The translations under genes were made by a program, and so were the position numbers. A stretch of DNA of 64,000 nt from Macrostomum lignano (Eukaryota): NCBI GenBank assembly GCA_002269645.1, contig NIVC01000540.1:186001-250000 (forward strand). Reading direction: 5' to 3'. Numbering within the stretch: the first letter of the stretch is position 1; each line of letters opens with the position of its first letter. Below, in pieces: positions 1 through 61,748 of this stretch. A model generated the notes under the pieces. The model searched no databases and was not told where the DNA came from. It worked only from the letters and a program-made list of their open reading frames with translations.

Positions 1-18
1 CATGTGACGGGAGGAGGG

Positions 19-471
<453 letters not shown>

Positions 472-3400
472 GTAGATAGCGAGAAAGAGCGAGCGAAGCG
501 AGCTCTTTCGAGCTTGCTTGCCGCAGCCAATCAAGCTGAATGCACGCACACAAGATCACCGGAAACGATTAAGGCAGCTGGAAAGCCAATGGGCGCGGTA
601 AGCGCTTTTATCCAGAGGAACTACCTGCTGGAACCAGCCTGCCGTTCGAAAATCAGACTACTCAAGTAGTGCAAAAGAGTGCGAGCAACTACCGAGAAAT
701 CTAATTTTCGTAACCGCTCCGGTGCAGGTCCTGGCAATAGATGGTAGATAGCGAGAAAGAGCGAGCGAAGCGAGCTCTTTCGAGCTTGCTTGCCGCAGCC
801 AATCAAGCTGAATGCACGCACACAAGATCACCGGAAACGATTAAGGCAGCTGGAAAGCCAATGGGCGCGGTAAGCGCTTTTATCCAGAGGAACTACCTGC
901 TGGAACCAGCCTGCCGTTCGAAAATCAGACTACTCAAGTAGTGCAAAAGAGTGCGAGCAACTACCGAGAAATCTAATTTTCGTAACCGCTCCGGTGCAGG
1001 TCCTGGCAATAGATGGTAGATAGCGAGAAAGAGCGAGCGAAGCGAGCTCTTTCGAGCTTGCTTGCCGCAGCCAATCAAGCTGAATGCACGCACACAAGAT
1101 CACCGGAAACGATTAAGGCAGCTGGAAAGCCAATGGGCGCGGTAAGCGCTTTTATCCAGAGGAACTACCTGCTGGAACCAGCCTGCCGTTCGAAAATCAG
1201 ACTACTCAAGTAGTGCAAAAGAGTGCGAGCAACTACCGAGAAATCTAATTTTCGTAACCGCTCCGGTGCAGGTCCTGGCAATAGATGGTAGATAGCGAGA
1301 AAGAGCGAGCGAAGCGAGCTCTTTCGAGCTTGCTTGCCGCAGCCAATCAAGCTGAATGCACGCACACAAGATCACCGGAAACGATTAAGGCAGCTGGAAA
1401 GCCAATGGGCGCGGTAAGCGCTTTTATCCAGAGGAACTACCTGCTGGAACCAGCCTGCCGTTCGAAAATCAGACTACTCAAGTAGTGCAAAAGAGTGCGA
1501 GCAACTACCGAGAAATCTAATTTTCGTAACCGCTCCGGTGCAGGTCCTGGCAATAGATGGTAGATAGCGAGAAAGAGCGAGCGAAGCGAGCTCTTTCGAG
1601 CTTGCTTGCCGCAGCCAATCAAGCTGAATGCACGCACACAAGATCACCGGAAACGATTAAGGCAGCTGGAAAGCCAATGGGCGCGGTAAGCGCTTTTATC
1701 CAGAGGAACTACCTGCTGGAACCAGCCTGCCGTTCGAAAATCAGACTACTCAAGTAGTGCAAAAGAGTGCGAGCAACTACCGAGAAATCTAATTTTCGTA
1801 ACCGCTCCGGTGCAGGTCCTGGCAATAGATGGTAGATAGCGAGAAAGAGCGAGCGAAGCGAGCTCTTTCGAGCTTGCTTGCCGCAGCCAATCAAGCTGAA
1901 TGCACGCACACAAGATCACCGGAAACGATTAAGGCAGCTGGAAAGCCAATGGGCGCGGTAAGCGCTTTTATCCAGAGGAACTACCTGCTGGAACCAGCCT
2001 GCCGTTCGAAAATCAGACTACTCAAGTAGTGCAAAAGAGTGCGAGCAACTACCGAGAAATCTAATTTTCGTAACCGCTCCGGTGCAGGTCCTGGCAATAG
2101 ATGGTAGATAGCGAGAAAGAGCGAGCGAAGCGAGCTCTTTCGAGCTTGCTTGCCGCAGCCAATCAAGCTGAATGCACGCACACAAGATCACCGGAAACGA
2201 TTAAGGCAGCTGGAAAGCCAATGGGCGCGGTAAGCGCTTTTATCCAGAGGAACTACCTGCTGGAACCAGCCTGCCGTTCGAAAATCAGACTACTCAAGTA
2301 GTGCAAAAGAGTGCGAGCAACTACCGAGAAATCTAATTTTCGTAACCGCTCCGGTGCAGGTCCTGGCAATAGATGGTAGATAGCGAGAAAGAGCGAGCGA
2401 AGCGAGCTCTTTCGAGCTTGCTTGCCGCAGCCAATCAAGCTGAATGCACGCACACAAGATCACCGGAAACGATTAAGGCAGCTGGAAAGCCAATGGGCGC
2501 GGTAAGCGCTTTTATCCAGAGGAACTACCTGCTGGAACCAGCCTGCCGTTCGAAAATCAGACTACTCAAGTAGTGCAAAAGAGTGCGAGCAACTACCGAG
2601 AAATCTAATTTTCGTAACCGCTCCGGTGCAGGTCCTGGCAATAGATGGTAGATAGCGAGAAAGAGCGAGCGAAGCGAGCTCTTTCGAGCTTGCTTGCCGC
2701 AGCCAATCAAGCTGAATGCACGCACACAAGATCACCGGAAACGATTAAGGCAGCTGGAAAGCCAATGGGCGCGGTAAGCGCTTTTATCCAGAGGAACTAC
2801 CTGCTGGAACCAGCCTGCCGTTCGAAAATCAGACTACTCAAGTAGTGCAAAAGAGTGCGAGCAACTACCGAGAAATCTAATTTTCGTAACCGCTCCGGTG
2901 CAGGTCCTGGCAATAGATGGTAGATAGCGAGAAAGAGCGAGCGAAGCGAGCTCTTTCGAGCTTGCTTGCCGCAGCCAATCAAGCTGAATGCACGCACACA
3001 AGATCACCGGAAACGATTAAGGCAGCTGGAAAGCCAATGGGCGCGGTAAGCGCTTTTATCCAGAGGAACTACCTGCTGGAACCAGCCTGCCGTTCGAAAA
3101 TCAGACTACTCAAGTAGTGCAAAAGAGTGCGAGCAACTACCGAGAAATCTAATTTTCGTAACCGCTCCGGTGCAGGTCCTGGCAATAGATGGTAGATAGC
3201 GAGAAAGAGCGAGCGAAGCGAGCTCTTTCGAGCTTGCTTGCCGCAGCCAATCAAGCTGAATGCACGCACACAAGATCACCGGAAACGATTAAGGCAGCTG
3301 GAAAGCCAATGGGCGCGGTAAGCGCTTTTATCCAGAGGAACTACCTGCTGGAACCAGCCTGCCGTTCGAAAATCAGACTACTCAAGTAGTGCAAAAGAGT

Positions 3401-4523
3401 GCGAGCAACTACCGAGAAATCTAATTTTCGTAACCGCTCCGGTGCAGGTCCTGGCAATAGATGGTAGATAGCGAGAAAGAGCGAGCGAAGCGAGCTCTTT
3501 CGAGCTTGCTTGCCGCAGCCAATCAAGCTGAATGCACGCACACAAGATCACCGGAAACGATTAAGGCAGCTGGAAAGCCAATGGGCGCGGTAAGCGCTTT
3601 TATCCAGAGGAACTACCTGCTGGAACCAGCCTGCCGTTCGAAAATCAGACTACTCAAGTAGTGCAAAAGAGTGCGAGCAACTACCGAGAAATCTAATTTT
3701 CGTAACCGCTCCGGTGCAGGTCCTGGCAATAGATGGTAGATAGCGAGAAAGAGCGAGCGAAGCGAGCTCTTTCGAGCTTGCTTGCCGCAGCCAATCAAGC
3801 TGAATGCACGCACACAAGATCACCGGAAACGATTAAGGCAGCTGGAAAGCCAATGGGCGCGGTAAGCGCTTTTATCCAGAGGAACTACCTGCTGGAACCA
3901 GCCTGCCGTTCGAAAATCAGACTACTCAAGTAGTGCAAAAGAGTGCGAGCAACTACCGAGAAATCTAATTTTCGTAACCGCTCCGGTGCAGGTCCTGGCA
4001 ATAGATGGTAGATAGCGAGAAAGAGCGAGCGAAGCGAGCTCTTTCGAGCTTGCTTGCCGCAGCCAATCAAGCTGAATGCACGCACACAAGATCACCGGAA
4101 ACGATTAAGGCAGCTGGAAAGCCAATGGGCGCGGTAAGCGCTTTTATCCAGAGGAACTACCTGCTGGAACCAGCCTGCCGTTCGAAAATCAGACTACTCA
4201 AGTAGTGCAAAAGAGTGCGAGCAACTACCGAGAAATCTAATTTTCGTAACCGCTCCGGTGCAGGTCCTGGCAATAGATGGTAGATAGCGAGAAAGAGCGA
4301 GCGAAGCGAGCTCTTTCGAGCTTGCTTGCCGCAGCCAATCAAGCTGAATGCACGCACACAAGATCACCGGAAACGATTAAGGCAGCTGGAAAGCCAATGG
4401 GCGCGGTAAGCGCTTTTATCCAGAGGAACTACCTGCTGGAACCAGCCTGCCGTTCGAAAATCAGACTACTCAAGTAGTGCAAAAGAGTGCGAGCAACTAC
4501 CGAGAAATCTAATTTTCGTAACC
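472..4523. repeat. 272-bp tandem array, ~14.9 copies, apparently identical units
   Basis: ORF track recurs every 272 nt on both strands with identical translation; first unit starts GTAGATAGC at 472, last breaks at TTCGTAACC 4523. Confidence 0.98.
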
Positions 4524-4604
4524 TGGGTCACTATCAATGTCACTCTCAGTGTCACTTTTTAGTGTCACTCCTTGTGCCACTCTCAGTGTTTTATAACCGT
4601 GTCA

Positions 4605-5510
<906 letters not shown>

Positions 5511-5579
5511 CTTATTTCACTGTCTTCCTATCTTGTACCCGCTCATATTTTCAAATTAATATTCCCCTATCAGTCTCAC

Positions 5580-5881
5580 CCTAGGCGCCGGGTAGATGGC
5601 GAACTCCAGCTTAGACTTCTTGCCGTATTCAACAGACAGGCGCTCCATGAGCAGGGAGGTGAAGCCGGAGCCGGTGCCGCCGCCGAAGCTGTGGAACACC
5701 AGGAAGCCCTGCAGGCCGGAGCAGCTGTCAGCAGTTTTTCTCAGCCGGTCGATGACCAGATCAATCATCTCCTTGCCGACTGTGTAGTGACCGCGGGCGT
5801 AGTTGTTAGCCGCGTCCTCCTTGCTGCTGATAAGCTGCTCCGGGTGGAACAGCTGCTTCGAGGCCGAGTTCTTGATCGTGT
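5580..5881 (-). CDS. TUBA: alpha-tubulin exon 3 (aa 76-176)
   Basis: [33 protein letters not shown]...SFGGGTGSG...YPAPR; acceptor CCAG (phase 1), donor GTGAGA (phase 0). Confidence 0.95.
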
Positions 5882-5905
5882 CTGGTGCATGTGACGGGAG
5901 GAGGG

Positions 5906-6374
<469 letters not shown>

Positions 6375-6388
6375 GCCTCTCTACTCAC

Positions 6389-6611
6389 CAATAACAGTCG
6401 GCTCCAGATCAACGAACAGCGCTCGCGGCACATTCTTCCCTGAGCTGGTCTCCTGGAAGAACGTATTGTAGGAGTCGTCTCCCTGGCCGAGGGTTGTGTC
6501 CGGCCTGGCGATGCCGTCCGGCCCGATGCCGTGCTCCAGGCAGTAGAGCTCCCAGCAGGCGTTGCCGATCTGCACACCAGCCTGGCCTACATGGATGGAG
6601 ATGCACTCGCG
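6389..6611 (-). CDS. TUBA: alpha-tubulin exon 2 (aa 2-75)
   Basis: [28 protein letters not shown]...[13 protein letters not shown]; acceptor GCAG, donor G|GTGAGT. Confidence 0.96.
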
Positions 6612-6684
6612 CTGCGGGTCGAGTACGGGCGATTTTCGGGCGTGGCTCGGAGAAGTGGGATAAAAAGTAACTGAGAAAGAGACG

Positions 6685-7340
6685 GAAGCAGAGATCAGAA
6701 CAGCCAGAAGCAGAGATAAGAACAGACAGAAGCAGAGATCGGAACAGACAGAAGCAGAGATAAGAACAGCTAGAAGCAGAGATAAGAACAGCCAGAAGCA
6801 GAGATCAGAACAGACAGAAGCAGAGATCGGAACAGACAGAAGCAGAGATCAGAACAGACAGAAGCAGAGATCGGAACAGGCAGAAGCAGAGATCAGAACA
6901 GACAGAAGCAGAGATCAGAACAGAGAGAAGCAGAGATCGGAACAGACAGAAGCAGAGATCAGAACAGACAGAAGCAGAGATCGGAACAGGCAGAAGCAGA
7001 GATCAGAACAGACAGAAGCAGAGATCAGAACAGACAGAAGCAGAGATCAGAACAGACAGAAGCAGAGATCAGAACAGACAGAAGCAGAGACCGGAACAGG
7101 CAGAAGCAGAGATCAGAACAGACAGAAGCAGAGATCAGAACAGAGAGAAGCAGAGATCGGAACAGACAGAAGCAGAGATCAGAACAGACAGAAGCAGAGA
7201 TCGGAACAGACAGAAGCAGAGATCAGAACAGAGAGAAGCAGAGATCGGAACAGACAGAAGCAGAGATCAGAACAGACAGAAGCAGAGATCGGAACAGACA
7301 GAAGCAGAGATCAGAACAGACAGAAGCAGAGATCAGAACA
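6685..7340. repeat. 22-bp minisatellite filling tubulin intron 1
   Basis: GAGATCAGAACAGACAGAAGCA in tandem. Confidence 0.95.
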
Positions 7341-7346
7341 ACTTAC

Positions 7347-7349
7347 CAT
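7347..7349 (-). CDS. TUBA: alpha-tubulin exon 1 (ATG only)
   Basis: CTACA-ATG|GTAAGT; an intron right after the start codon is typical of animal alpha-tubulins. Confidence 0.85.
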
Positions 7350-7793
7350 TGTAGAATTAAGCGGGACACAAAGCTGAACTGTCAGGGGTCGCGCAAAGAC
7401 ACACGAAATGAAGTTCCGCAGTTATTATTTCAACCTACCGCTTATCGCGCGGCTTCCATCGGCTGCTGTAAAATTTATCTAGACCAGGTAAGCTGAGAGA
7501 GCGGGCGGGCTGGCTTGGTGAGGGTGAGGGTGATAGGATTGGCTGGCTGGATGCAAGAGGCTGGACCGAACGAACACCGTCGAGTACCGAATTCCTCTGC
7601 GCCTTCATCGTCCCTCCCTTCCCAAGCAAAAACTGCCCGGCAACCCCTTGAAAATATTTGCCGCAGCAGAGGGCGTCTGTCAGCTTTCGGATGCCGCAAT
7701 AGGCAATACCTGGCTGAGTCATGGCTGCGTCCGGACATTCCCTCCGTGGAGCTCTAAATATAAAGCTTTGGAGTGGATAACCTGGATTTGAGG

Positions 7794-8406
7794 GCCTGCG
7801 ACGCTAAAATGAGTGCCTGCGACGCTAAAATGAGTGCCTGCGGCGCTAAAATGAGTGTCTGTGGCGCTAAAATGAGTGCCTGCGGCGCTAAAATGAGTGT
7901 CTGTGGCGCTAAAATGAGTGCCTGCGGCGCTAAAATGAGTGTCTGTGGCGCTAAAATGAGTGCCTATGGCGCTAAAATGAGTGCCTGCGACGCTAAAATG
8001 AGTGCCTGCGACGCTAAAATGAGTGCCTGCGGCGCTAAAATGAGTGCCTGCGGCGCTAAAATGAGTCCCTGTGGCGCTAAAATGAGTGCCTATGGCGCTA
8101 AAATGAGTGCCTGTGGCGCTAAAATGAGTGCCCATGACGCTAAAATGAGTGCCTGCGGCGCTAAAATGAGTGCCTGCGGCGCTAAAATGAGTGCCTGCGG
8201 CGCTAAAATGAGTGCCTGTGGCGCTAAAATGAGTGCCCATGACGCTAAAATGAGTGCCTGCGACGCTAAAATGAGTGCCTGCAGCGCTAAAATGAGTGCC
8301 CGCAGCGCTAAAATGAGTGCCCGCAGCGCTAAAATGAGTGCCTGCGGCGGTAAAATGAGTGCCTGCGACGCTAAAGTGAGTGCCTGCGGTGCTAAAATGA
8401 GTGTCT
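7794..8406. repeat. 21-bp minisatellite (GCCTGCGGCGCTAAAATGAGT)
   Basis: Direct reading; shares GGCGCTAAAAT core with arrays at 18533-19645. Confidence 0.95.
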
Positions 8407-9004
8407 GAGGCGCCAATTTAACGCCCCAGACATTAAATTGGCGCCAGTTAATTAAAATTTGACGCCAATTAAATTTTTCGGCGTTAAGTCATACAGGCCT
8501 CTCTGATCAACACTGCTTCTCCACTCCAGGTTCTGAATCTGGAACTCCTTGATTCTTTCAGAGAGAAAGCAAGAGATATTGCGATACCGCCAGCAGCCAG
8601 CCGCCTTCGCGCACGCTTATTCACCCATTTTCCCCCTTTCTTTCTTCCCAACATTCTGCCTCTAACGCTTCTAGAATGCAAAGCTCCGGTTGCTATGGGC
8701 CCTGCTTAGTCAGCGTCTGTCTGCAACGGACAAAACCAGAGACAAAATGGCTCTCTGCAACGAAGACAGATTTTGTTCGTTAAAACATTTGCTGCCGGCT
8801 GGGCAGGGCCTGGCTAGGAAACTGCTGTTCCATGCCAGGCAAAAAACCGCTCTGGTCCACTGTTTCCTAATTAGCGGCGCGAACGAATGCCGTTGCAGCA
8901 GGGCGCTCTAGAATAATTCGACGAAATTGTACTGATTGCTTAATGAAGGCTGTGTGCTTGTTGAGTGAGTTCGGATTGCAGTTTAGCTTTAATGTCATTG
9001 ACTG

Positions 9005-9580
9005 AGCCCTCTCCTCTCCGTTCAGAAGTTATCACTGCTCTCCCCTCTCCTCTCCTCTCTCCGCTCAGATGTTATATCTCCTCTTATCTCCCTCTATTCT
9101 TCACTCACATCTCTCCCCTCTCCGCGCAGATGTTATCGCTCCTCTCATCTCTCTCCTCCCATCTCTGTCCTCTCATCTCTCTCCTCTCACCTCTTTCCTC
9201 TACTCTCCACTCTCATCACTCTCCTCTACTCTTCCCTCTCATCTCTCTCCTCTTATCTCTTTCCTCTTATCTCTTTCCTCTACTCTCCCCTCTCATTTTT
9301 CTCCTCTCACCACTCTCCTCTCATCTCTCTCCTCTTATCTCTCTCCTATCATCTCTCCCCTCTCTTCTCCCCTCTCCTCTTCCCTCTCATCTCTCTCCTC
9401 TCATATTCCCCTCTCCTCTCCCCCTTCTCTCTCCTCTTCTCTATTCTCTCCTCTCCCCTCTCCTCTCCCCTCTCCTCTCCCCTCTCCTCTCCCCTCTCAT
9501 CTCTCTCCTCTGTTCTGCCTACTCATCTCTCTAATCTGCTCTTCCTCCCTGTCATCTTTCTCCTGTGCATTTTCGTCGCA
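9005..9580. repeat. CT-rich low-complexity tract
   Basis: Direct reading. Confidence 0.85.
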
Positions 9581-9915
9581 TCTTCTTTCATATTGTCCAT
9601 GAGCACAATGAAAAAAATCCAACGTAAAAATAATTTGTCAATATACTTCAATATACTCGTAGAAAAAGTCATACCCAAGTCTAGAGGCAGAGAATGCTTA
9701 TTATTTAACAAATACTCCTTGCTACTCGAATTAACGAGATATATTTGATTGGCTAATCAATTGATCAAATTTGCATGCTTTGCAAACGAATGGCGGGTTA
9801 TTAGAGGCTGTACAAAGGTGACAAACAATTCTGTACAAAATTTAAACAATTTTCCAACCTATGAGATAATAGCACACTATGGACAGCAGTTATAGTTAGC
9901 GAACAAAGTTCGAAG

Positions 9916-10410
9916 GCGGGGAGAGAGGCGGGGAGAGAGGCGGGGGAGAGAGGCGGAGGGAGAGAGGCGGAGGGAGAGAGGCGGAGGGAGAGAGGCGGAG
10001 GGAGAGAGGCGGAGGGAGAGAGGCGGAGGGAGAGAGGCGGGAGAGAGGCGGAGGGAGAGAGGCGGAGGGAGAGAGGCGGGAGAGAGGCGGAGGGAGAGAG
10101 GCGGAGGGAGAGAGGAGGGAGAGAGGCGGAGGGAGAGAGGCGGAGGGAGAGAGGCGGAGGGAGAGAGGCGGAGGGAGAGAGGCGGAGGGAGAGAGGCGGA
10201 GGGAGAGAGGCGGAGGGAGAGAGGCGGAGGGAGAGAGGCGGAGGGAGAGAGAGAGGCGGAGGGAGAGAGACGAAGGGAGAGAGAGAGGCGGAGGGAGAGA
10301 GGCGGAGGGAGAGAGAGAGGCGGAGGGAGAGAGGCGGAGGGAGAGAGGCGGGGAGAGAGGCGGAGGGAGAGAGGCGGAGGGAGAGAGGCGGAAGAGAGGC
10401 GGGGAGAGGA
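9916..10410. repeat. 14-bp purine-rich minisatellite (GAGAGAGGCGGAGG)
   Basis: Direct reading. Confidence 0.9.
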
Positions 10411-10872
10411 GGAAGTATGGAAAGTGCATTTTTGTTTCAAACCGAATTAGTCCTTTTATAAATCTAGTTCCCTGGTGAAAAACAGTTTGATGCAGAGATT
10501 GATGCAGATTAAAAAATACACCATTTACGAGCTACATTTGTTCAACTAATTCACTAGAACGAATTGGCGTCTGTAACAGATAGGTGCAGACTGAGTCCTA
10601 CTCGAGAGTGCAATCAATCTAAGCGGTACAAAGAACTCACAGCCAGAAGCAGAACTGGACAATATTGAGCGATTTCTATGCAGCGATTATCGTAAAAATC
10701 ACCACTTAACGGGCTAGAAGCACTCAGATTAGGCAGTAATACGTAATTCAGCGCTGGGGCAGTTACACTTCGTTTCTATTTGAAACGGAAAATTTTTCCT
10801 TCGCTGCCTACTCATCAACAGCTGTTCAGTAGGCGGAAAAGCAAGTTGCTGCTAATAATAATCAACTATTTA

Positions 10873-11531
10873 TTATGCCTCCTGCCCCTCCCCAGCGGCG
10901 GAGGCTTCGCCGCCCTCCCTCAGCAGCGAGTTGGCCTCGCGCAGCAGGGTGTCCGCCTTGCGCAGCATCCGCCTGCTCAGCTCCAGGCGAGCGTTCGGCC
11001 CGCCGCCGCTGCTTGCGCCACCCGATGATACTGATGCCGCCTCAGCGTCCGCCTCATCGGCGGCAGTTGTCGACATCAGGAAGGGCGCCGATTCCGAGGC
11101 CGACGCCGCGCCGACTCCGTTGGCAATGGAGTTCGGCCTGCAGTTCCCTGCTTGCCGCTGCCGCTGCTGCTGCAGCTGCTGCAGCTGCTGCAACTGCTGC
11201 TGCTGCCGCAACAGCTGCGACGGGTGCGGAGGCGGCGGCGGCGGACCGTGCGACTCGCGGCGGGACACGCCGCCGTTGGCCCCGACGGCCACTGTGTCGT
11301 AGAGGGCGCGGCAGCTGCCGGCTTCAGCGGCGCTCGGCGCCATGGAGCCAGGCGGCAGAGTTCTGGAGCGAGTCAGTCGGGAGCCGCCGCGTGGGAGCTC
11401 CTCGTACTGACTGTCCCGGCCCGAGGCGGCGGCTGCTGCTGCCGCGGTTTCGTCCTCGGTCACCTGGACGGTGCTGACGCAGAGGCAGGCACCGAGACAG
11501 CCCGGCGGTTGCTGCTTTCGGCGTCGCAGCT
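10873..11531 (-). CDS. Ig-domain receptor exon 4 (cytoplasmic tail, stop)
   Basis: Acceptor TTGCAG phase 1; LRRRKQQPPGCLGACLCV...SQYEEL...LYDTV...poly-Q...EGQEA*; GC-rich and in frame with the TM exon. Confidence 0.75.
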
Positions 11532-11659
11532 CTGCAAGTAGTTGGCGGAGGCGAGGATGTGGGCGGAGAAGGGAGTGGATTTTGCGGCTGAGATAAGGGC
11601 GGTTGTAAGAGGATGCACTAATAGGTAGATGTAGAAGTGGTAGATGTAGAAATGGCGAA

Positions 11660-12305
11660 TGTATGAAGGGTGGATGTATGAAGGGGCGGATGTATGAAGG
11701 GGCGGATGTATGAAGGGTGGATGTATGAAGGGGCGGATTTATGAAGGGGGCAGATGTATGAAGGGGCGGATGTATGAAGGGGCGGATGTATGAAGGGGCG
11801 GATGTATGAAGGGGGCGGATGTATGAAGGGGGGGCGGATGTATGAAGGGTGGATGTATGAAGGGGCGGATGTATAAAGGATGGATGGGATGTATGAAGGG
11901 CGGATGTATGAAGGGGTGGATTTATGAAGGGGGTATGTATGAAGGGTGGATTTATGAAGGGGCGGATGTATGAAGGGGCGGATTTATGAAGGGGCGGATG
12001 TATGAAGGGACGGATGTATGAAGGGGGGATGTATGAAGGGTGGATTTATGAAGGGGCGGATGTATGAAGGGGCAGATTTATGAAGGGGCGGATGTATGAA
12101 GGGGCAGATGTATGAAGGGGTGGATGTATGAAGGGCGGATTTATGAAGGGGCGGATGTATGAAGGGGGGATGTATGAAGGGTGGATTTATGAAGGGGCGG
12201 ATGTATGAAGGGGCAGATTTATGAAGGGGCGGATGTATGAAGGGGCAGATGTATGAAGGGGTGGATGTATGAAGGGCGGATTTATGAAGGGGCGGATGTA
12301 TGAAG
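11660..12305. repeat. 16-bp minisatellite (ATGTATGAAGGGGCGG)
   Basis: Direct reading. Confidence 0.9.
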
Positions 12306-13330
12306 TGGCAGATTGAAATGGTTGATTCGAGTCGCTGACAGGTGAAGTCGTGGATGAAGACTGAGGCAAGGTGGAACTTGATGAATGGAGGGAGGAAGGA
12401 ACGAATGAAGGGGCTGACGAATCCATTCAGCCTGACGGTCTGATCGATCCCAAACCAGACAGGATGAGGATGAGAATGGGATGCGGGAAGGTGGATGAAG
12501 CGGGAATCTGCCAGACCCCTGGCCCTAAGGAGGGATCCCGTGCCTTTTCTGACTCAGATCTCAGAAAGGCATTATTTATCACAATTCTCTTCTTACCTCA
12601 ATCTCTTGTCCTCTCCCTCCTCCTCGCCTTTCATCTTTTCCGACTTACGACGCGGGTTCCTTGTGTGTGTTTGTGTGTGCGCTGGCCCCGTCCTCCCCAT
12701 CCTATCTCAAATAACCCATCTAGCTGTCAGAAATCTCATCTTTTATTCGCATTTCTTTTTTATTTTCTTTGACTTTCTACCGGCGCTACCCGGCACTCTC
12801 TTCGTTTCACCATTAGCTAAGCTTAGCCCTGATTTCTGCTTTTCAGCCTGGGCAGTGCGTTGCAGCTAATGAAAGTCGCTTACTTATCCGAAAATTGTTG
12901 CATGCAGGGATTGCGTATTATTGGAAAGATAAGCGAGCTAAGAGACCCCGAACAAAGACTTACCTTCGATAGTTTGGAACTGATTCTTGCATTTATAAAA
13001 TTGCAGGTTTTACAACTTCACAACCTGTCACAGTTCGGATAAGCTGGCTAACCGAAAAGGCATCGCAGAACAGGATCCAAGTGTGAAGAAGATGAAAAAT
13101 CAACCCTAAGGCCTAAGCAACAACAGAGTTCCAAATATTAATTTGGGTTCAATCTGCATGAGGGTGTGTTTGCTTACGCATCCGTGTTCGGAATGGACAA
13201 GTCCCAGTTTCAAATAGACCTGACAGATAGTAGAATAACTTGTTTATGCACTCGCAATTAATTTATCAATAAGAAGAGCATTTAATGTGGCATTTAAAAA
13301 TTCCTTAGGGTTTAATATTTTCTTAGGACT

Positions 13331-13535
13331 AATCTAGCTCAGCCAATGAGAGAGCAGTAAGGAGAGAGAGAGATCAAAGTCAGACGGACGAAACTCAGCC
13401 TAGGGGGGCAGGCCCAATCTAGCTCAGCCAATGAGAGAGAGATCAAAGTCAGACGGACGAAACTCAGCCTAGGGGGGCAGGCCCAATCTAGCTCAGCCAA
13501 TGAGAGAGCAGTAAGGAGAGAGGTCAAAGTCAGAC
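13331..13535. repeat. ~70-85 bp local triplication (AATCTAGCTCAGCCAATGAGAGAG...)
   Basis: Motif recurs at 13331, 13416, 13485. Confidence 0.85.
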
Positions 13536-14562
13536 ACAAGCGGACTGGAGGCTGGAGCGCCACCCCTTTTCTGCTTGTTATGCGCACGCGCTGGATTCGG
13601 GTTTTTCTAAAGATGCTAATTTAATGGGTCTGCTTGTAGAAAGCCAAAGGCGATTGTTGCGGCTTTAAAAACTTGAAATGTTTTGTAAAATTAAGTTACA
13701 TTCATTTTATAATATTTTTTTTTAAATGTATCAAGACAAAAAGCTCTAATTTTACTACTGAAAAATAGTAGGTGATAGAATTCTTTGCAAGCGACATACT
13801 TTTTAAAACCTGTCGACAAACGAATTAGTGATTCATTGAGTACGATTTCAAAGCATTTCTCTCTTTTCCCTCAGTCTATATTTGACTCCCCTCTTTTCAG
13901 ATCTGACAGGTAATGCCTCCTTTGACCCTATGCTATCTCGCCATCTCTTCAATTCTCTAGAGCTGAGGTGTAGTCAGTCGGTTTTACGCCCTCGGGGTGC
14001 GAATCCTGTTCTTGATGCCGATGCGAGGATGGTTGGCTAACCTACCCTAAGGGATAAAGCTGAAGGGTCTGCCTGCCTACCTGCATGCATTGCCCGCCGC
14101 CCAGCCGCCCAGTTCCTCTTTCCGGGTACAGGACGCGGCCTTTCAAATGCCGCCCACAAGCGCAGGAATTCCAGCTGGCTGGCTACCAAAGCCAGGGCCC
14201 AATGCGTATTACGCAACACATGCTGAGCCACGCAATCTCTATGCTCTGATCCAGCTATTCATAGCTAATCTATACATGAAATGCACATATTTTACAACTG
14301 GCTTTAACGAAACGAATTGGAAGTGGCAGAGGAGAGACAGTGCTGGACCACCCGCATATCATATTTTCACTCCACTCCGTTGGATTCTATGGATTTCTGT
14401 CAACTAGAAGACGAATACTAGAAATTGAAAATTTGACATTCACCTGTCCAAGGATTCAATTCATGGGGTGACACAGCTAAGGATTGACATCTAATGTCAG
14501 TTGTAGGGACCTAAAGACTAATCTCTATGGATCTATGGAGTAAACTTGGTCTGAATGCCGGA

Positions 14563-15019
14563 TAGTGTGCTGGATAGAGTGCTGGATAGACTGCTGGATG
14601 GAGTGCTAGATAGAGTGCTGGATAGAGTGCTGGATAGAGTGCTGGATTGCTGTATAGAGTGTTCAATAGAGTGATGGATAGAGTGCTGGATAGAGTGCTA
14701 GATGGAGTGCTGGATTGCTGGATAGAGTGTTCAATAGAGTGCTGGATAGAGTGCTGGATTTCTGTATAGAGTGTTGGATAGAGTGCTGGATAGAGTGCTG
14801 AATTGCTGGATAGAGTGCTGGATAGAGTGCTGGATAGAGTGCTGAATTGCTGGATAGAGTGCTGGATAGAGTGCTGTATAGAGTGCTGGATAGAGTGCTG
14901 GATAGAGTGCTGGATAGAGCGCTGTATAGAGTGCTGGATAGAGTGCTGGATAGAGTGCTGTATAGAGTGCTGGATAGTGCTGGATAGAGTGCTGTATAGA
15001 GTGCTGGATAGAGTGCTGG
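14563..15019. repeat. 12-bp minisatellite (GATAGAGTGCTG)
   Basis: Direct reading. Confidence 0.9.
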
Positions 15020-16055
15020 GTGTAGCTTCACATGGAACACGGGGTAGAACCCACGTGTCCTTAATTTGTACTTTAACTGAGGTCAATTCTTCAGCTAGAA
15101 GCACAGCGACCCGGTAGGAACAGGTTAATCCGCGAACAGAACAGGGCGATTAAAAACCGAGGAGCCGGCATGGCGCACAGGCCTATTAATGAAGCGATCT
15201 CATCCAAGCTAATTAGCTGTACCCGCTAGCTAACAACCTGCTGCAGTGCAGCTGCGGATAAAGTAAATGCAGTCCCGCAGAAGCCAGCTCCGACCTTCTA
15301 CTCAAGCAGACTCGAATCTGTGACCCGAACCTGGGCCAATGAGCCAGCAATTCGAGCAGAGGGGGGGGGGGTTAGCGGTGCAAAAAAGACCCCATTAGGG
15401 ATGCGGCATGGAGCAGACGCACGCGCTTCCTACATCTATTAATCGATTCCTGCCGCTCTTTTTTAGCCCCCCTCCCTACGAAAGATTAAAACGAAGATTA
15501 AAAGGCGATGGGTGTGGCTTTGACGGTCTACTCCATGAGCTCTGCTTGACTCACCGGTGTGTTATATCTGTAATACCCCTGCCCTGCGCTTTCACAACTC
15601 TTAGTAACCAATGGGGATATTGGGAATATTTAGTTGCTAGGGCCTTGCCGTCAGCTGACTGTCCCCGATCTCGACCGCGTAGGCAGCGGGTGAATGACAG
15701 TTCGGGGTCGGCTCTGCGTTCAATATTCTCGCGCTCTTTCAATTAAGCGAATTCGCCATTCGACTGTTCAAAGTTGGTCACGGCATCATTCAGTGGCTGG
15801 AGTGGGCGAGCCCGGGACCAGATTAGGTTGGCAGGGAGAAACTCGAACACAACTCGAATAATTGACAGGTCGGGTGGGGATGTGACAGACGGTGGAGAGG
15901 GCGGGTGCTTAATTATAACTACCTGGAACATTGGTTGCCAGCCGGAACATTTGGCACGGCGAGGCACAAAGAGAGAGTGAGATGTGGCTTCAACATCACA
16001 TGTGAGGCTTCAATAGAAAGGGTCTGCTTTGATCAGGAAGGGTTGGGTGAAATTT

Positions 16056-16290
<235 letters not shown>

Positions 16291-16312
16291 CACACAGACA
16301 GTCAGCGATCAC

Positions 16313-16423
16313 CAATGTAATGCCTGGCCAGGATGCAGCGCAGGCAAAACCCAATGTTGACAACCAGCGACACGCCCAGCACGGCCAGAGCACCGATGAC
16401 GTAATCCGGCTTCATGCGGGGCA
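16313..16423 (-). CDS. Ig-domain receptor exon 3 (transmembrane)
   Basis: Acceptor TTCCAG, donor G|GTGATC, phase 1-1, 111 nt; PRMKPDYVIGALAVLGVSLVVNIGFCLRCILARHYI. Confidence 0.75.
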
Positions 16424-17297
16424 CTGGAAGGCGGGGTCGGGAGACGAGTTGCATTCGCCGAGCATAATCTTGCAAAGCAAATATTTGAGCAAGCAGAATT
16501 CGAGTCTTTTTTCCGTCAAAATCTCTCTCCCCTGGCGAAAATCCGCCGCACCACCTTTAGCGAGGCACCCCGCTGAGATTGGTCCGAAAACCTGGCATCC
16601 GACTGAGGGGGGGGGCTGGAAGAAGCAGAAGAAGCCACTGAACAGATTTTTGCTGCCACAAGAGACTGCCAGTCTGCAATTTAATTTTTCAAGGGGATTC
16701 TGAGCCTGCTTTGAGAGAAAGAGAGACCATGAGCGCGTGTCATTCTTTTCGCGAAATCTTGAGCTGGACTCAGAGCCCAGCACCTCTAGTGTTGTGTTTG
16801 AGCTTGTTTTCGTCAATTGAGCCGAGATAAAGAGTAGCAGAGTGAAATGCAGAATGTGGAGGTGCATAGAAACAGCTAAAATAATGGGTCGGCCGTATTG
16901 TTAAACATGAAAGTGAGCAATTTCTATGTGAGCAAGGCAAACTTTAATTATGTCAGCTTTGAAAAATTACAGCTTACTGGCTAGCAATATTCTAGGCAAC
17001 TGTTGTTAAGAAGTGGCTGGGGCAGTATCATGCCTCGCAGGTTAAAAAGATAAAGAGCCCCCCCCCCCAGTCTGGCTGCACCTCGCGCTTATCTAGACTA
17101 CCGATTAACCGTCTTGTGCAATTTTGCGGAAAAGCCATGGCAGACTGACAAATTTTCATTCGTAAACTTTGCCACTTCTTGCACAAGTGCTTCAGTTCTT
17201 GCCTGTCTTCTTTTATAGACAGCGTCACAATTTCTAACGCTCGGCACTTTAATCTGGCGCCATCGCGCTATTTATACAGGCTGGAGCCGTCTTCTCT

Positions 17298-17939
17298 AGC
17301 GCCACTATCCCAAAGCGCCACTATCCCAAAGCGCCACTATCCCAAAGCGCCACTATCCCAAAGCGCCACTATCCCAAAGCGCCACTATCCCAAAGCGCCA
17401 CTATCCCAAAGCGCCACTATCCCAAAGCGCCACTATCCCAAAGCGCCACTATCCCAAAGCGCCACTATCCCAAAGCGCCACTATCCCAAAGCGCCACTAT
17501 CCCAAAGCGCCACTATCCCAAAGCGCCACTATCCCAAAGCGCCACTATCCCAAAGCGCCACTATCCCAAAGCGCCACTATCCCAAAGCGCCACTATCCCA
17601 AAGCGCCACTATCCCAAAGCGCCACTATCCCAAAGCGCCACTATCCCAAAGCGCCACTATCCCAAAGCGCCACTATCCCAAAGCGCCACTATCCCAAAGC
17701 GCCACTATCCCAAAGCGCCACTATCCCAAAGCGCCACTATCCAAAGCGCCATTATCCCAAAGCGCCACTATCCCAACCCAAAGCGCCACTATCCCAAAGC
17801 GCCATTATCCCAAAGCGCAACTATCCCAAAGCGCCACTATCCCAAAGCGCCACTATCCCAAAGCCGCACTATCCCAGAGCGCCATTATCCCAGAGCGCCA
17901 CTATCCCAAAGCGCCATTATCCCAGAGCGCCACTATCCC
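17298..17939. repeat. 16-bp minisatellite (AAAGCGCCACTATCCC)
   Basis: Direct reading. Confidence 0.95.
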
Positions 17940-18532: not shown

Positions 18533-18907
18533 ATCTTGTCTGTGGCGCTAAAATCTTGTCTGTGGCGCTAAAATCATGTCTGTGGCGCCGAAATTATGTC
18601 TGTGGCGCTGGAATCTTGTCTGTGGCACTAAAATCTTGTCTGTGGCGCTAAAATCATGTTTGTGGCGCCGAAATTATGTCTGTGGCGCTGGAATCTTGTC
18701 TGTGGCACTAAAATCTTGTCTGTGACGCTAAAATCTTGTCTGTGACGCTAAAATCTTGTCTGTGGCGCTAAAATCTTGTCTGTGGCGCTAAAATCTTGTC
18801 TGTGGCACTAAAATCTTGTCTGTGACGCTAAAATCTTGTCTGTGACACTAAAATCTTGTCTGCATCGCTAAAATCTTGTCTGTGGCGCTAAAATCTTGTC
18901 TGCATCG
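18533..18907. repeat. 20-bp minisatellite (TGTCTGTGGCGCTAAAATCT)
   Basis: Direct reading; second block at 19413-19645. Confidence 0.92.
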
Positions 18908-20145
18908 CTAAATAGTAATGTAGTTAATACTACAAGTGGATGCAAAACTACCCAAATTGATTTGCAAAAGCGTACAATATTGCATTATGATTATCATTAG
19001 AATCGCTATATTAAAAAATTCCATATCTAAAAAAGCCGGTTTAGGCTGCGCTTCTTCTATCGGCCTCGTGTGTGGTCTCGAAATTGAAAAAAATATACTG
19101 CTCAACCTGCTTTCTACAGGGCGTCCTTCCCTACTTTATGAGTATAACAGGGCTTCTCAGCTAATTATGTGCAGTCAGGCTGAGCACTTGCCCATGAAGC
19201 TTATGGGTCTCATGCGGGTTAATTCTGAGGTGGGCAAGGTGAATTCTGGTTATCGCAGAGCACACACACAGTGCAGTGCACTGCAGCCGTCTCTGCTTTG
19301 CCATACTGTTTTCTCTCGCCAATACACTCTCGCCCAGAGCTCCATCAAGTTTTGTCTTTCTCTCTCTCTCTCTCTCATTTTCATTCTGAACTGACCCGCC
19401 ACAAACCCGCCATGTCTGTGGCGCTAAAATCTTGTCTGTGGCGCTAAAATCTTGTCTGTGGCACTAAAATCTTGTCTGTGACGCTAAAATCTTGTCTGTG
19501 ACACTAAAATCTTGTCTGCATCGCTAAAATCTTGTCTGTGGCGCTAAAATCTTGTCTGTGGCGCTAAAATCTTGTCTGTGGCGCTAAAATCTTGTCTGCA
19601 TCGCTAAAATCTTGTCTGTGGCGCTAAAATCTTGTCTGCATCGCTAAATAGTAATGTAGTTAATACTACAAGTGGATGCAAAACTACCCAAATTGATTTG
19701 CAAAAGCGTACAATATTGCATTATGATTATCATTAGAATCGCTATATTAAAAAATTCCATATCTAAAAAAGCCGGTTTAGGCTGCGCTTCTTCTATCGGC
19801 CTCGTGTGTGGTCTCGAAATTGAAAAAAATATACTGCTCAACCTGCTTTCTACAGGGCGTCCTTCCCTACTTTATGAGTATAACAGGGCTTCTCAGCTAA
19901 TTATGTGCAGTCAGGCTGAGCACTTGCCCATGAAGCTTATGGGTCTCATGCGGGTTAATTCTGAGGTGGGCAAGGTGAATTCTGGTTATCGCAGAGCACA
20001 CACACAGTGCAGTGCACTGCAGCCGTCTCTGCTTTGCCATACTGTTTTCTCTCGCCAATACACTCTCGCTCAGAGCTCCATCAAGTTTTGTCTTTCTCTC
20101 TCTCTCTCTCTCATTTTCATTCTGAACTGACCCGCCACAAACCCC
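18757..20145. repeat. tandem segmental duplication (minisatellite plus ~500 bp unique), offset 736
   Basis: 18908-19409 recurs at 19644-20145, near-identical. Confidence 0.93.
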
Positions 20146-27957: not shown

Positions 27958-28933
27958 GGGTGCCATCACAAGCTCGAAAAGTCACATCGTCGAAAAGCAT
28001 CTACCATCACAATCTCGAAAAATCATAAGCTCGAAAAGTCATATCGTCGAAAAGTTTAGCAACCACCATCACAAGCTCGAACATGGTTAGGGTTAGAGCT
28101 TGTGCCTTAGGGTTAGGGTTTAGGGTTAAGTTTAGGGTTGGGGTTAGAACTTGTGCCTTAGGGTTAGGGTTTAGGGTTAGGGTCGGGGTTAGAACTAGTG
28201 CCTTTAAGTTAGGGTTTAGGGTTAGGTTAGGGTTGGGGTTAGGGTTAGTGCCTTGGGGTTAGGGTTAGTGCCTTGGGGTTTCGACGATGTGATTTTTCGA
28301 GCTTGTGATGGTGGCTGCTAAATTTTTCGACGATATGATTTTTCGAGTTTATGACTTTTCGAGATTGTGATGGAGCCTTGTTTTCGACGATATGATTTTT
28401 CGAGCTTATGACTTTTCGAGATTGTGATGGAGCCTTATTTTCGACGATATGATTTTTCGAGCTTATGACTTTTCGAGATTGTGATGGAGCCTTATTTTCG
28501 ACGATATGATTTTTCGAGCTTATGACTTTTCGAGATTGTGATGGAGCCTTATTTTCGACGATATGATTTTTCGAGCTTATGACTTTTCGAGATTGTGATG
28601 GAGCCTTATTTTCGACGATATGATTTTTCGAGCTTATGACTTTTCGAGATTGTGATGGAGCCTTATTTTCGACGATATGATTTTTCGAGCTTATGACTTT
28701 TCGAGATTGTGATGGAGCCTTGTTTTCGACGATATGATTTTTCGAGCTTATGACTTTTCGAGATTGTGATGGAGCCTTATTTTCGACGATATGATTTTTC
28801 GAGCTTATGACTTTTCGAGATTGTGATGGAGCCTTGTTTTCGACGATATGATTTTTCGAGCTTATGACTTTTCGAGATTGTGATGGAGCCTTGTTTTCGA
28901 CGATATGATTTTTCGAGCTTATGATGGCGACCC
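27958..28933. mobile_element. non-autonomous foldback-type DNA transposon with TTAGGG core and expanded 57-bp subterminal repeat
   Basis: 8-bp TSD GCAGATAT (27950-27957, 28934-28941); termini GGGTGCCATCACAAGCTCGAAAA / TTTTCGAGCTTATGATGGCGACCC; arms 28004-28081 and 28296-28373 inverted. Confidence 0.88.
28085..28277 (+). repeat. degenerate interstitial (TTAGGG)n
   Basis: Multiple TTAGGG/TTTAGGG units mixed with TTAGTGCC variants. Confidence 0.85.
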
Positions 28934-45156: not shown

Positions 45157-46570
45157 TCACGCTGCTCCGCAATGGCTGTTCCGGTCGGCTGCGGCAACGG
45201 CGCTCAATGGGGCCGACGAGCCGCCGCTGCCGCTGGCGCCGTTGCTCCCAGACGTAGATCTGCAATGGCACTCGTCAGATTCAAGCTCGCCTTCCTGGCC
45301 GGCGAGATCGCAGTTGGCCGAGCTGCTGCCGGCCGTGGCATTCGATCCGGCCGGGGCGGGAGCGCCGAGCAGAGGCTTGGCCGAGTCGGTCTTGTTGCCG
45401 TCGCCAAAGCCGTGAACGCAATTGCCATTGGTCTCGTTGGCGCGGTGCCGATAACCTTCAACAGCGCCGCCGCAGCGAGTCAGAGCTAGCCGCTGCTGCT
45501 GATGCTGCCGAGGATGTGCCAGGCCGTTCCCGCCGCTCACGCCAACGTCAATAGCCGCTATGGTCGTCACCTGATGGCTGCCACCGCCGCCGATGGCTGT
45601 CGCCGATTGTCGCCGACGCCGGCGCCTTCGCCTACGCCAGGGACGCCGGAGGATGAGCCAGATGGCAGCCAGGGTGGCCAAGCCCAGAGCATAGCTGACC
45701 AGGGCGGCCAGAGCGTGCGACCACAGCGGATAGTGCGGCGTGGCTGACGATGCTTGAGGAGGAGTACATCGCTGTGAGTGCGGCGGAGGCTGCTGGACTT
45801 GTTGTACAGGCGATGAGGTTTGCAGCAAAGCTGGCACAGTCGGCAGGCTGGGCGGAAACAAAGGCTGGCTGACCGCATCGAACAGAGGCAAATAGTGAGC
45901 CCTGCCGCACGGCTTGGAGACCAGGCCGCAGTCTGAAATCCCGAATTGGGAAATCAGCTGGGCAGGCAGGCCGGTCAGTTCGGGCCTGACCAGATAGCAC
46001 GGATTAAACTGGCACCTGGCAATCAGCGAGCGATGCTTGAATTCAGCCAGCCGGATTAGCAGCCGATTCCTATAGAATCCGGGCGAGCCGAGCCAGTTCG
46101 AATTCGGCAGCGTGCAACCCTTGGCAACTAGCTCGGCCAGCAATTCGCCGGTGTCGGCGTCCTCCAGACGGCAGTTCTCAATAACGGCGCCATATAAGAA
46201 ATCGGTTCGAACAGGTCGAAGCTCGATTGTGTAGTTGCCAGGGTAACTGCTACGGCCGCTACTGCTATTGGTTAGGCTGAGACGGAAGGCCAGCTGACTG
46301 GCTATGCGCATTCGGTTCTGCTCAAATTCCGGCCCCGGCAGAGCTGCCTGCGGTCCCTCCCGCTCCACCGACGCGAGGCTCATGTCGCTCCAAGTAAAAA
46401 ATCGAAAATAGCGGCCCAGCTTATCCGTCAATGGGGGAGACCGCCAGTTGTTGAACTGCACAGCTAGATAGGCTGACACTTTGCTGGCCTTGGCTTCGCT
46501 GCCGCATTCGCCGCTGACAATCAGCCGGCCGACGCTGCCGTCTGGTAGGGTGGCTAAACGGCAGGAGTCG
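45157..46570 (-). CDS. ZP-module membrane protein, last exon (ZP-N end, ZP-C, TM, tail)
   Basis: Acceptor TTCCAG (phase 2); ZP-C-like Cys pattern ENC...AKGC...ARCQFNPC...SDC..SKPC; TM LAALVSYALGLATLAAIWLIL followed by poly-Arg. Confidence 0.8.
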
Positions 46571-46644
46571 CTGGAAAATTTGTTGCGCAATCGTGAAATT
46601 TTTTATTGGGCTCCGGCTGGCTTTACCACTAGTGCTAGTGCTGC

Positions 46645-46915: not shown

Positions 46916-47000
46916 ATAACGTAAGTGAATGCAACCCAAGCAAGAAAGGTGTACATCATGCCTGCACTGCCACAGTGACAAGCTATTAAGAACCTCATAC

Positions 47001-55517: not shown

Positions 55518-55560
55518 TATTATGAAATGCCCAATATACAGCAAACTTAATATATGCATA

Positions 55561-61669: not shown

Positions 61670-61748
61670 TGTAGGCCCTAACTTCTAAGCAAAGCAGATA
61701 TGTATATGTGATTTGGCATAATTTGGTGTAATGACATACACTAGTATA

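What the first reader, a model, noticed from the sequence alone, without database searches (positions are those of the whole stretch)
472..4523. Homogeneous 272-bp concatemer whose unit carries a strand-specific ssDNA-type hairpin: candidate rolling-circle mini-element
Seen: ~15 head-to-tail copies with no variant I could find, whereas most other arrays here are visibly degenerate. Each unit contains AGC-GA-GAAAGAGC-GA-GC-GAA-GC-GA-GCTCTTTC-GA-GCT (first copy 478-514). This 37-nt hairpin is Watson-Crick throughout except for two symmetric GA/GA pairs, and all four GA dinucleotides lie in a CGAG context. The unit also has further small hairpins (627-638, 657-670, 713-723) and two CCAAT boxes (525-533, 584-592). 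Known: d(GCGAAGC) is an exceptionally stable DNA mini-hairpin; tandem sheared G.A pairs are stable in 5'-PyGAPu-3' contexts; GAGC repeats are the AAV Rep (HUH endonuclease) binding motif. The complementary strand would have TC/TC mismatches, so the fold favours one strand. Inference: this looks selected for a single-stranded intermediate, for example a small circular non-autonomous element amplified by rolling-circle replication and integrated as a concatemer. An origin or terminus captured from a Helitron, parvovirus or YR element is another option.
Basis: partly seen in the sequence, partly recalled or inferred. Interest (0 to 1): 0.82.

Follow-up and report, generated by a model that had tools for sequence, protein, structure and literature searches.

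The report
Young 272-bp tandem array in flatworm tubulin intron
A perfectly uniform 15-copy, 272-bp tandem repeat sits in an intron of one alpha-tubulin gene copy of the flatworm Macrostomum lignano, where it was recently imported at the joint of a local duplication; nothing found here ties it to a rolling-circle or virus-like element.

Summary
There are 14 identical 272-bp units and a 15th cut at unit position 238 (window 465-4523).

The window is Macrostomum lignano assembly Mlig_3_7. The array lies in an intron of an alpha-tubulin gene on the minus strand, between two copies of a 1.85-kb block. These copies are 100% identical apart from their TAGA repeat. Two diverged sister loci in the same assembly have neither the array nor the duplication.

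Both array ends are truncated while inner units are complete. No progenitor sequence lies nearby. The donor was therefore already tandem or circular. The joints show a 2-nt microhomology and a TAGA-like homology.

The 37-nt hairpin is no more stable than shuffled sequence and barely favours one strand. A stronger 78-nt hairpin lies elsewhere in the unit, on the gene's sense strand, but ranks only in about the top 5% locally.

I found no Rfam family, tRNA, spliced leader, hammerhead core, HUH/Rep, RT or recombinase domain, and no relative in any searchable collection.

Best reading: a young imported satellite-like array at a structural-variant joint. Rolling-circle amplification of a small circle stays possible but untested.

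The parts
465..4523 (.). Tandem array of the 272-bp unit: 14 identical full copies from 478, a 15th copy ending at unit position 238, and a 13-nt partial copy at the left edge with one mismatch.
478..514 (+).
   Evidence: -9.1 kcal/mol, z -0.86; opposite strand -8.3 kcal/mol, z -0.60
527..531 (+). First CCAAT motif of the unit (first copy).
   Evidence: about 0.27 expected per strand by chance (my arithmetic)
586..590 (+). Second CCAAT motif of the unit (first copy).
640..717 (-). The strongest hairpin of the unit: 78 nt, 29 pairs, 12-nt loop, on the sense strand of the tubulin gene (first copy).
   Evidence: RNA -33.5 kcal/mol, z -6.9; plus strand -19.6 kcal/mol, z -3.0. Calibrated to about the top 5% of local segments.
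19..479 (.). (TAGA)n microsatellite. It is the in-window part of the distal copy of the duplicated block and merges with the TAGA-like tail of the unit at 465-477.
4522..4523 (.). Right joint: the 2 nt 'CC' are shared by the unit (positions 237-238) and by intron 4.
4524..4621 (-). First 98 nt of tubulin intron 4 (5' splice site GTGAGA), cut short by the array.
4522..6367 (-). Proximal copy of the 1.85-kb duplicated block: the start of intron 4, exon 4, intron 3 with its 30-mer array, exon 3 and (TAGA)n. The distal copy lies mostly left of the window (L001 16871-18715).
   Evidence: 1384 bp with 0 mismatches; differences only inside (TAGA)n
4622..4925 (-). Alpha-tubulin exon 4.
5580..5881 (-). 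Alpha-tubulin exon 3.
6389..6611 (-). Alpha-tubulin exon 2.
7347..7349 (-). Start codon. Exon 1 contributes only ATG to the coding sequence.

Best explanation
The array is a young, locus-specific structural variant with no shown function of its own.

In one of three copies of an alpha-tubulin gene of Macrostomum lignano, a single repair or replication accident did two things. It duplicated a 1.85-kb block (TAGA repeat, exon 3, intron 3, exon 4 and the first 98 nt of intron 4). It also filled the joint with about 15 units copied from a 272-bp template that was already tandem or circular.

The two new joints used short homologies: 2 nt (CC) on one side, and a 6-13-nt TAGA-like motif at the end of the unit against the intron's (TAGA)n on the other. 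That is the signature of template switching or microhomology-mediated end joining.

Shown here: the anatomy, the absence from sister loci, the identity of the copies, and the need for a tandem or circular donor. Inferred: the repair pathway, and that the array is a tolerated passenger because two other gene copies remain intact. If exons 3 and 4 were spliced in twice, the product would carry an in-frame 202-residue duplication (302 + 304 nt).

The 37-nt hairpin is a by-product of a GAGC-rich low-complexity stretch, not a selected origin of replication.
For: - Host and gene. The spliced exons are 100% identical to M. lignano tubulin BOX15_Mlig024944g2. The window is the reverse complement of contig NIVC01000540.1.
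- Layout. The order is exon 2, (CTAT)n, exon 3, 30-mer array, exon 4, 272-bp array, (CTAT)n, exon 3', 30-mer array, exon 4', exon 5.
- Age. The duplicated blocks differ at 0 of 1384 bases outside the microsatellite. The sister loci L002 and L003 are only 88-96% identical to this locus. They carry single copies of exons 3 and 4 and no unit.
- Origin. The unit has no other copy in the window or in the 31-kb, 26-kb and 25-kb loci.
- Ends. The array runs from unit position 260 to position 238, so inner units hold 21 nt that are absent from both flanks.
- Assembly resolution. The assembly keeps 2% divergence between adjacent 736-bp copies.
- Precedent in the species. Injected DNA forms tandem concatemers and integrates at random in M. 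lignano (PMC5730564).
- Precedent elsewhere. Intronic satellite arrays, proposed to spread through excised circles, rolling-circle copying and reintegration at short similarities, are described in Tribolium (PMC3411249).
Against: - No donor locus or circle was seen. I could not search the rest of the M. lignano genome or the raw reads.
- The contig comes from error-prone long reads assembled with Canu and polished with Pilon. The exact identity of the copies, and even the duplication, could be partly an assembly product.
- The unit is more self-complementary than background. Whole-unit RNA z is -3.0 (plus) and -4.4 (minus), against a background mean of -0.32, sd 1.27 and minimum -3.62 over 96 windows. 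That leaves room for a structured-RNA role.
Confidence: 0.55

Rival explanations
1. Rolling-circle origin. A 272-bp extrachromosomal circle (microDNA size), cut out of a single-copy site elsewhere, was copied round and round during break repair. The concatemer was then captured at the duplication joint. This is de novo birth of a satellite. It is a special case of the best explanation in which the donor is a circle, not an existing array.
For: There are zero variants in 14 copies (3,808 bp), while the same assembly keeps 2% divergence in a neighbouring duplication. The donor must have been circular or tandem. The unit length lies in the size range reported for microDNA (my knowledge). Tandem concatemers of introduced DNA form readily in this species. 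The circle, rolling-circle and reintegration route has been proposed for satellites.
Against: No circle and no single-copy progenitor was observed. A homogeneous chromosomal array as donor explains the data equally well. Polishing with multi-mapping short reads can erase rare variants (method).
Confidence: 0.2
2. Assembly artefact. The duplication, the array or its uniformity comes from mis-joined or chimeric long reads and consensus polishing in a repeat-rich, partly triplicated genome.
For: The method was Canu on CLR reads plus Pilon, and the authors report 180-312 Mb of redundancy. The duplicated blocks are suspiciously perfect. (TAGA)n, which forms one joint, occurs several times in the window.
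Against: The other joint lies in 98 nt of unique intron with only 2 nt of shared sequence. That is too little for a false overlap. The two (TAGA)n copies differ at 9 mismatches and 3 gaps, as expected of separate loci. Three distinct contigs exist for the three gene copies, so this is not a collapse. The assembler resolves 2% divergence nearby.
Confidence: 0.15
3. Hairpin-RNA array. Transcribed with the tubulin pre-mRNA, each unit presents a 78-nt, 29-pair hairpin that is processed into small RNAs. This would be a new intronic tandem cluster like the repeated microRNA clusters of vertebrates.
For: The hairpin at 640-717 lies on the gene's sense strand. It folds at -33.5 kcal/mol with z -6.9, against -19.6 and z -3.0 on the other strand. 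Three G-U pairs favour the sense strand. The whole unit folds best on that strand too.
Against: Under an identical scan, 3 of 60 background segments do as well. More than 60 places in the window reach -30 kcal/mol in 78 nt. Three G-U pairs all on one strand has a chance of 0.25. No microRNA or other Rfam family matched at E up to 10. The array is absent from the sister loci, so there is no conservation to lean on.
Confidence: 0.05
4. A captured origin or terminus of a Helitron, parvovirus or tyrosine-recombinase element, or a ribozyme-bearing retrozyme-type repeat.
For: Only resemblance. There are four GAGC tetramers in the 37-nt hairpin, two of them adjacent, and the repeat is tandem with a unit of a few hundred bp in a flatworm.
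Against: The 18 window ORFs scanned have no Rep/HUH, helicase, RT or recombinase domain. There is no Rfam match, ribozymes included. No CUGANGA hammerhead core lies on either strand. The unit and the hairpin core found nothing in IMG/VR, phage or plasmid collections. The same 21-nt core recurs in unrelated prokaryotic contigs, so it is not diagnostic.
Confidence: 0.03

Closest known systems
Euchromatic, gene-associated satellite arrays (for example TCAST-like elements in introns of Tribolium castaneum, PMC3411249)
   Same: Both are short tandem arrays of a unit a few hundred bp long inside introns. They are flanked by unrelated sequence and joined at short similarities. Import through a circle or by recombination has been proposed.
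   Different: No parent satellite is known for this unit. The copies are identical rather than a few percent diverged. The array sits exactly at the joint of a 1.85-kb duplication.
Tandem duplications with templated insertions at the joint (replication template switching, FoSTeS/MMBIR type; my knowledge)
   Same: It has a direct duplication of local sequence, foreign sequence at the joint, and 2-13 nt of homology at each joint.
   Different: The insert is a 15-fold concatemer, so the template was repetitive or circular. The pathway is inferred from sequence only.
MicroDNA / small extrachromosomal circular DNA amplified by rolling circle
   Same: The unit length of 272 bp fits the size class, and perfect head-to-tail copies are what one circular template would give.
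   Different: No circle and no progenitor site was observed. This is compatibility only.
Retrozymes and hammerhead-bearing tandem repeats of animals (for example flatworm and newt satellite repeats; my knowledge)
   Same: It is a tandem repeat of a few hundred bp with a highly self-complementary unit, in a flatworm.
   Different: No hammerhead or other ribozyme was found by Rfam at E up to 10, and no CUGANGA core is present.
Tandemly repeated intronic microRNA clusters (my knowledge)
   Same: It carries one pre-miRNA-sized hairpin per repeat unit, in an intron, on the sense strand.
   Different: There is no known miRNA family, no conservation and no expression data. The hairpin is only in the top 5% or so for this genome.

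Membership tests
Satellite-like or macrosatellite tandem repeat | Head-to-tail copies of a unit longer than 100 bp with no coding capacity | tested here: met
   14.9 copies of 272 bp. The longest open stretch is 68 codons and no homologue was found.
Satellite-like or macrosatellite tandem repeat | The same unit present at other genomic sites or in related species | not testable with these tools
   Only about 130 kb of M. lignano could be read. There is no copy in the window or in L001-L003.
HUH/Rep rolling-circle elements (Helitron, parvovirus-like, CRESS-like) | A Rep/HUH endonuclease, with or without a helicase, in the element or a related autonomous partner | tested here: not met
   No such Pfam domain in the 18 window ORFs scanned. 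The unit itself has no ORF over 68 codons. The rest of the genome was not searchable.
HUH/Rep rolling-circle elements (Helitron, parvovirus-like, CRESS-like) | An origin hairpin that is unusually stable or strand-specific | tested here: not met
   z -0.86 and -0.60; -9.1 against -8.3 kcal/mol. The energy model does not credit sheared G-A pairs, so the test is incomplete.
HUH/Rep rolling-circle elements (Helitron, parvovirus-like, CRESS-like) | Sequence relatives among viral or mobile-element collections | tested here: not met
   No match in IMG/VR, phages or plasmids.
Retrozyme / ribozyme-bearing tandem repeat | A self-cleaving ribozyme (hammerhead or other) in each unit | tested here: not met
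   No Rfam match at E up to 10 over 3.7 units on both strands. No match at gathering score over the window. No CUGANGA core.
Small-RNA gene arrays (spliced leader RNA, snRNA, 5S, tRNA or SINE-derived) | A recognisable RNA gene in the unit | tested here: not met
   Rfam found none. ARAGORN found none. The published M. lignano spliced leader (PMC8629364) has no match within 6 substitutions in the window or within 4 in L001-L003, and no BLAST match to the unit.
Tandem microRNA cluster | A pre-miRNA-like hairpin on the transcribed strand | tested here: inconclusive
   The hairpin is present, but 3 of 60 background segments match it.
Tandem microRNA cluster | Discrete mature small RNAs and conservation | not testable with these tools
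   No small-RNA reads were available. The array is absent from the sister loci.
Duplication with templated insertion (template switch or microhomology end joining) | A direct local duplication, foreign insert at the joint, and microhomology at both joints | tested here: met

The most novel reading that the evidence does not exclude
The array records the birth of a satellite. A 272-bp extrachromosomal circle was multiplied by rolling-circle synthesis and captured at a break inside a tubulin gene of a newly polyploid flatworm. Its sense-strand 78-nt hairpins now ride in the tubulin pre-mRNA, where they could seed a new small-RNA cluster.
Probability: 0.1. Interest if true: 0.6.

Novelty: new member of a known kind. 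Interest (0 to 1): 0.27.

Why it matters
If the structure is real, it is a cleanly datable example of how a long-unit tandem array appears in a gene. It is dated as younger than the homeolog split. The array was imported as a ready-made concatemer at a duplication joint with short homologies, and was tolerated because the genome holds spare copies of the gene. That bears on how satellites spread into euchromatin. It also bears on how far gene models in this widely used regeneration model can be trusted, since the annotated 450-residue tubulin must skip a duplicated exon pair. It offers no support for a new class of rolling-circle mobile element.

Tried and rejected
- Rfam, E up to 10 on 400-1400 and gathering scores on the whole window: nothing.
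- tRNA or SINE head: nothing.
- Spliced-leader RNA gene array: rejected, no match to the published leader.
- Hammerhead core motif: absent.
- Vector, phage or plasmid origin: no blastn match.
- Viral, metagenome and prokaryote-genome scans with a 28-32-nt unit word: nothing.
- The 21-nt hairpin core gave 32 metagenome hits. They share only 21-29 nt and belong to unrelated prokaryotic palindromes.
- Routes to other copies through predicted proteins failed. Exact look-up of the two 66-codon ORFs found nothing. A word-indexed search of the plus-strand ORF found nothing. A full HMMER search of the 68-codon minus-strand stretch gave one E = 7e-4 hit, which is a translated low-complexity repeat.
- SMRTbell read-around artefact: rejected. 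That would give a unit made of two perfectly complementary halves, and this unit is only partly self-complementary.
- Promoter reading from the two CCAAT motifs: too weak to pursue. About 0.27 are expected per strand by my arithmetic.
- Literature search for a Macrostomum satellite catalogue: none held.
Full report
**1. The observation**

The 37-nt anchor sequence occurs 15 times at an exact spacing of 272 bp (478, 750 ... 4286), and only on the plus strand. Units 1-14 are identical at every base. Unit 15 matches up to unit position 238 and then runs into unrelated sequence at window 4524. TRF gives 465-4523, period 272, 14.9 copies.

The palindromes at 627-638, 657-670 and 713-723 can be read from the sequence. 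The CCAAT motifs lie at 527-531 and 586-590. Other arrays of ten or more copies in the window show 57-99% matches, and only one other reaches 99%. The description is correct.

**2. Where the window comes from**

Just right of the array, the minus strand encodes alpha-tubulin exons. [quoted passage not shown] The locus fetched for that protein shows that window 1-17349 is the exact reverse complement of part of contig NIVC01000540.1 of assembly GCA_002269645.1, known as Mlig_3_7.

That assembly was built with Canu from error-prone PacBio reads and polished with Pilon. Its authors report 15% simple and tandem repeats and much redundancy, because the sequenced line carries extra chromosome copies (PMC5730564). 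Nearly every intron or spacer in the first 42 kb of the window has its own minisatellite. Tandem arrays as such are therefore ordinary here.

**3. Anatomy of the locus**

In gene orientation (locus L001), the order is as follows:

- ATG-only exon 1
- exon 2
- (CTAT)n
- exon 3
- a 30-mer array
- exon 4
- 98 nt of intron 4
- the 272-bp array
- (CTAT)n again
- exon 3 again
- the 30-mer array again
- exon 4 again
- the rest of intron 4 with 12-mer arrays
- exon 5

The array therefore sits exactly at the joint of a 1.85-kb tandem duplication. Outside the microsatellite, the two copies differ at 0 of 1384 positions. The two (CTAT)n tracts differ by 9 mismatches and 3 gaps. Exons 3 and 4 together are 606 nt. 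Splicing them in twice would therefore give an in-frame 202-residue duplication, and the annotated 450-residue product must skip one pair.

**4. Comparison with sister loci**

The same assembly holds two further copies of the gene on other contigs (L002 and L003). They are 88-96% identical to this locus and share its intronic minisatellites. Each has single copies of exons 3 and 4. Neither has any trace of the 272-bp unit in 25-26 kb.

The array plus duplication is a 5887-bp novelty private to this copy. It is much younger than the split between the copies: at about 5% divergence roughly 69 differences would be expected in 1384 bp, and none is seen.

**5. How the array got there**

The unit has no second copy or partial progenitor anywhere in the window or in the three loci. 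The array starts at about unit position 260 and ends at position 238. Inner units contain 21 nt (239-259) that neither flank can supply.

An in-place expansion of local sequence is therefore excluded. Whatever was inserted was already longer than one unit, so the donor was a tandem array or a circle.

- The right joint shares 2 nt (window 4522-4523) between unit and intron.
- At the left joint, the unit's own TAGA-like tail merges with the intron's (TAGA)n over 6-13 nt.

A direct duplication, a foreign insert at its joint and short homologies at both joints form the known signature of template switching or microhomology-mediated joining. I take that as the most likely mechanism (inference).

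M. lignano readily turns introduced DNA into tandem concatemers and integrates them at random (PMC5730564). Intronic satellite arrays in Tribolium have been explained by excised circles, rolling-circle copying and reintegration at short similarities (PMC3411249).

**6. Is the uniformity real?**

A 736-bp tandem duplication at 18676-20144 in the same contig keeps 15 mismatches, 2% divergence. The pipeline therefore does not flatten adjacent copies at that level. Rare single variants could still have been polished away. Zero differences in 3.8 kb means the copies are very young or come from one template. This cannot separate a homogeneous chromosomal donor from rolling-circle copying of one circle.

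**7. The hairpin claim**

As single-stranded DNA, the 37-mer folds at -9.1 kcal/mol with z = -0.86; 37 of 200 shuffles do as well. Its complement folds at -8.3 kcal/mol with z = -0.60. With 8-11 nt of flank added, a different pairing is preferred. The whole unit folds equally on both strands as DNA, -51.9 against -52.0 kcal/mol. Imperfect palindromes of this size occur about once per 2 kb in the rest of the window.

The energy model gives no bonus for sheared G-A pairs or the GCGAAGC loop.

The 21-nt core of the hairpin occurs exactly in 32 metagenome contigs of clearly unrelated, mostly prokaryotic context, often nested in longer palindromes. The motif is a recurrent simple hairpin. It is not a marker of any replication system.

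**8. What is structurally unusual**

The whole unit is more self-complementary than shuffles. RNA z is -3.0 (plus) and -4.4 (minus), and DNA z is -3.7 and -4.0. The minus-strand value lies beyond all 96 background windows from the same contig (mean -0.32, sd 1.27, minimum -3.62).

Most of this comes from a 78-nt, 29-pair hairpin at 640-717 on the minus strand, the sense strand of the tubulin gene. It folds at -33.5 kcal/mol with z -6.9, against -19.6 and z -3.0 on the plus strand. It has the size of a microRNA precursor.

Three cautions apply. Under an identical scan, 3 of 60 background segments do as well. More than 60 places in the window reach -30 kcal/mol in 78 nt. The three G-U pairs that favour the sense strand could fall that way by chance (p = 0.25). 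I treat this as a weak lead.

**9. Tests of named families**

- No Rfam family matched at E up to 10 over 3.7 units, and none at gathering score over the whole window.
- No tRNA-like gene was found.
- There is no match to the published M. lignano spliced leader.
- No hammerhead core was found.
- None of the 18 window ORFs scanned has a Rep/HUH, helicase, RT or recombinase domain.
- There was no match in plasmid, phage, IMG/VR, JGI metagenome or prokaryote-genome collections.
- The longest open stretches of the unit (66 and 68 codons) have no homologue. The single E = 7e-4 hit is a translated low-complexity repeat.

**10. Verdict**

The feature is real in the assembly and correctly described. 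It is best read as a young, imported, satellite-like array marking a complex structural variant in one of three tubulin gene copies (confidence 0.55).

The idea that a strand-specific ssDNA hairpin and an HUH-type system lie behind it is not. A circle plus rolling-circle origin stays open (about 0.2). Assembly error stays open too (about 0.15).

The kind of thing is known, so I rate it a new member of a known kind, with modest interest.

**Limit of this study**

I could read only about 130 kb of the M. lignano genome and no raw reads. Genome-wide distribution, read support and expression all remain untested.

Noticed in passing
window 1-42000: Almost every intron or spacer holds its own minisatellite: about 45 arrays, units of 4-92 bp, roughly 0.2-0.7 kb each (one of 3 kb), spaced every 0.4-0.5 kb. 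Those in the tubulin introns are shared with the two sister loci, so they are older than the split between the gene copies.
   Followed up: partly
L001 17356-18615 (left of the window) and window 4622-5881: Tubulin exons 3 and 4 are present twice in the annotated gene Mlig024944.g2. The 450-residue model must skip one pair. Including both would give an in-frame 202-residue duplication.
   Followed up: partly
window 18676-20144: Tandem duplication with a 736-bp period and 97.95% identity. It carries an identical 152-codon ORF in each copy with no Pfam match.
   Followed up: partly
window 28085-28280: Interstitial telomere-like block of mixed TTAGGG and TTTAGGG repeats.
   Followed up: no
window 54000-64000: G+C falls to 29-36%, against 42-59% in the rest of the window, with few ORFs.
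   Followed up: no
window 45157-48557, minus strand: Three long ORFs (477, 201 and 208 codons) look like exons of one gene. One has a predicted membrane-spanning stretch followed by a run of arginines. None has a Pfam family.
   Followed up: partly
L007, L008, L009, L012, L014, L016-L018, L020, L021, L027 (JGI metagenome contigs): The exact 21-nt hairpin core AGAGCGAGCGAAGCGAGCTCT is nested inside a longer palindrome (CCCAGGGTG...ACCCTGGG) in many unrelated environmental contigs. This may be a prokaryotic repeat family built on the same G-A-flanked GCGAAGC mini-hairpin.
   Followed up: partly
window 640-717, minus strand, repeated every 272 bp: A 78-nt, 29-pair hairpin of microRNA-precursor size on the sense strand of the host gene. 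It is much stronger than the hairpin the finding was built on.
   Followed up: yes
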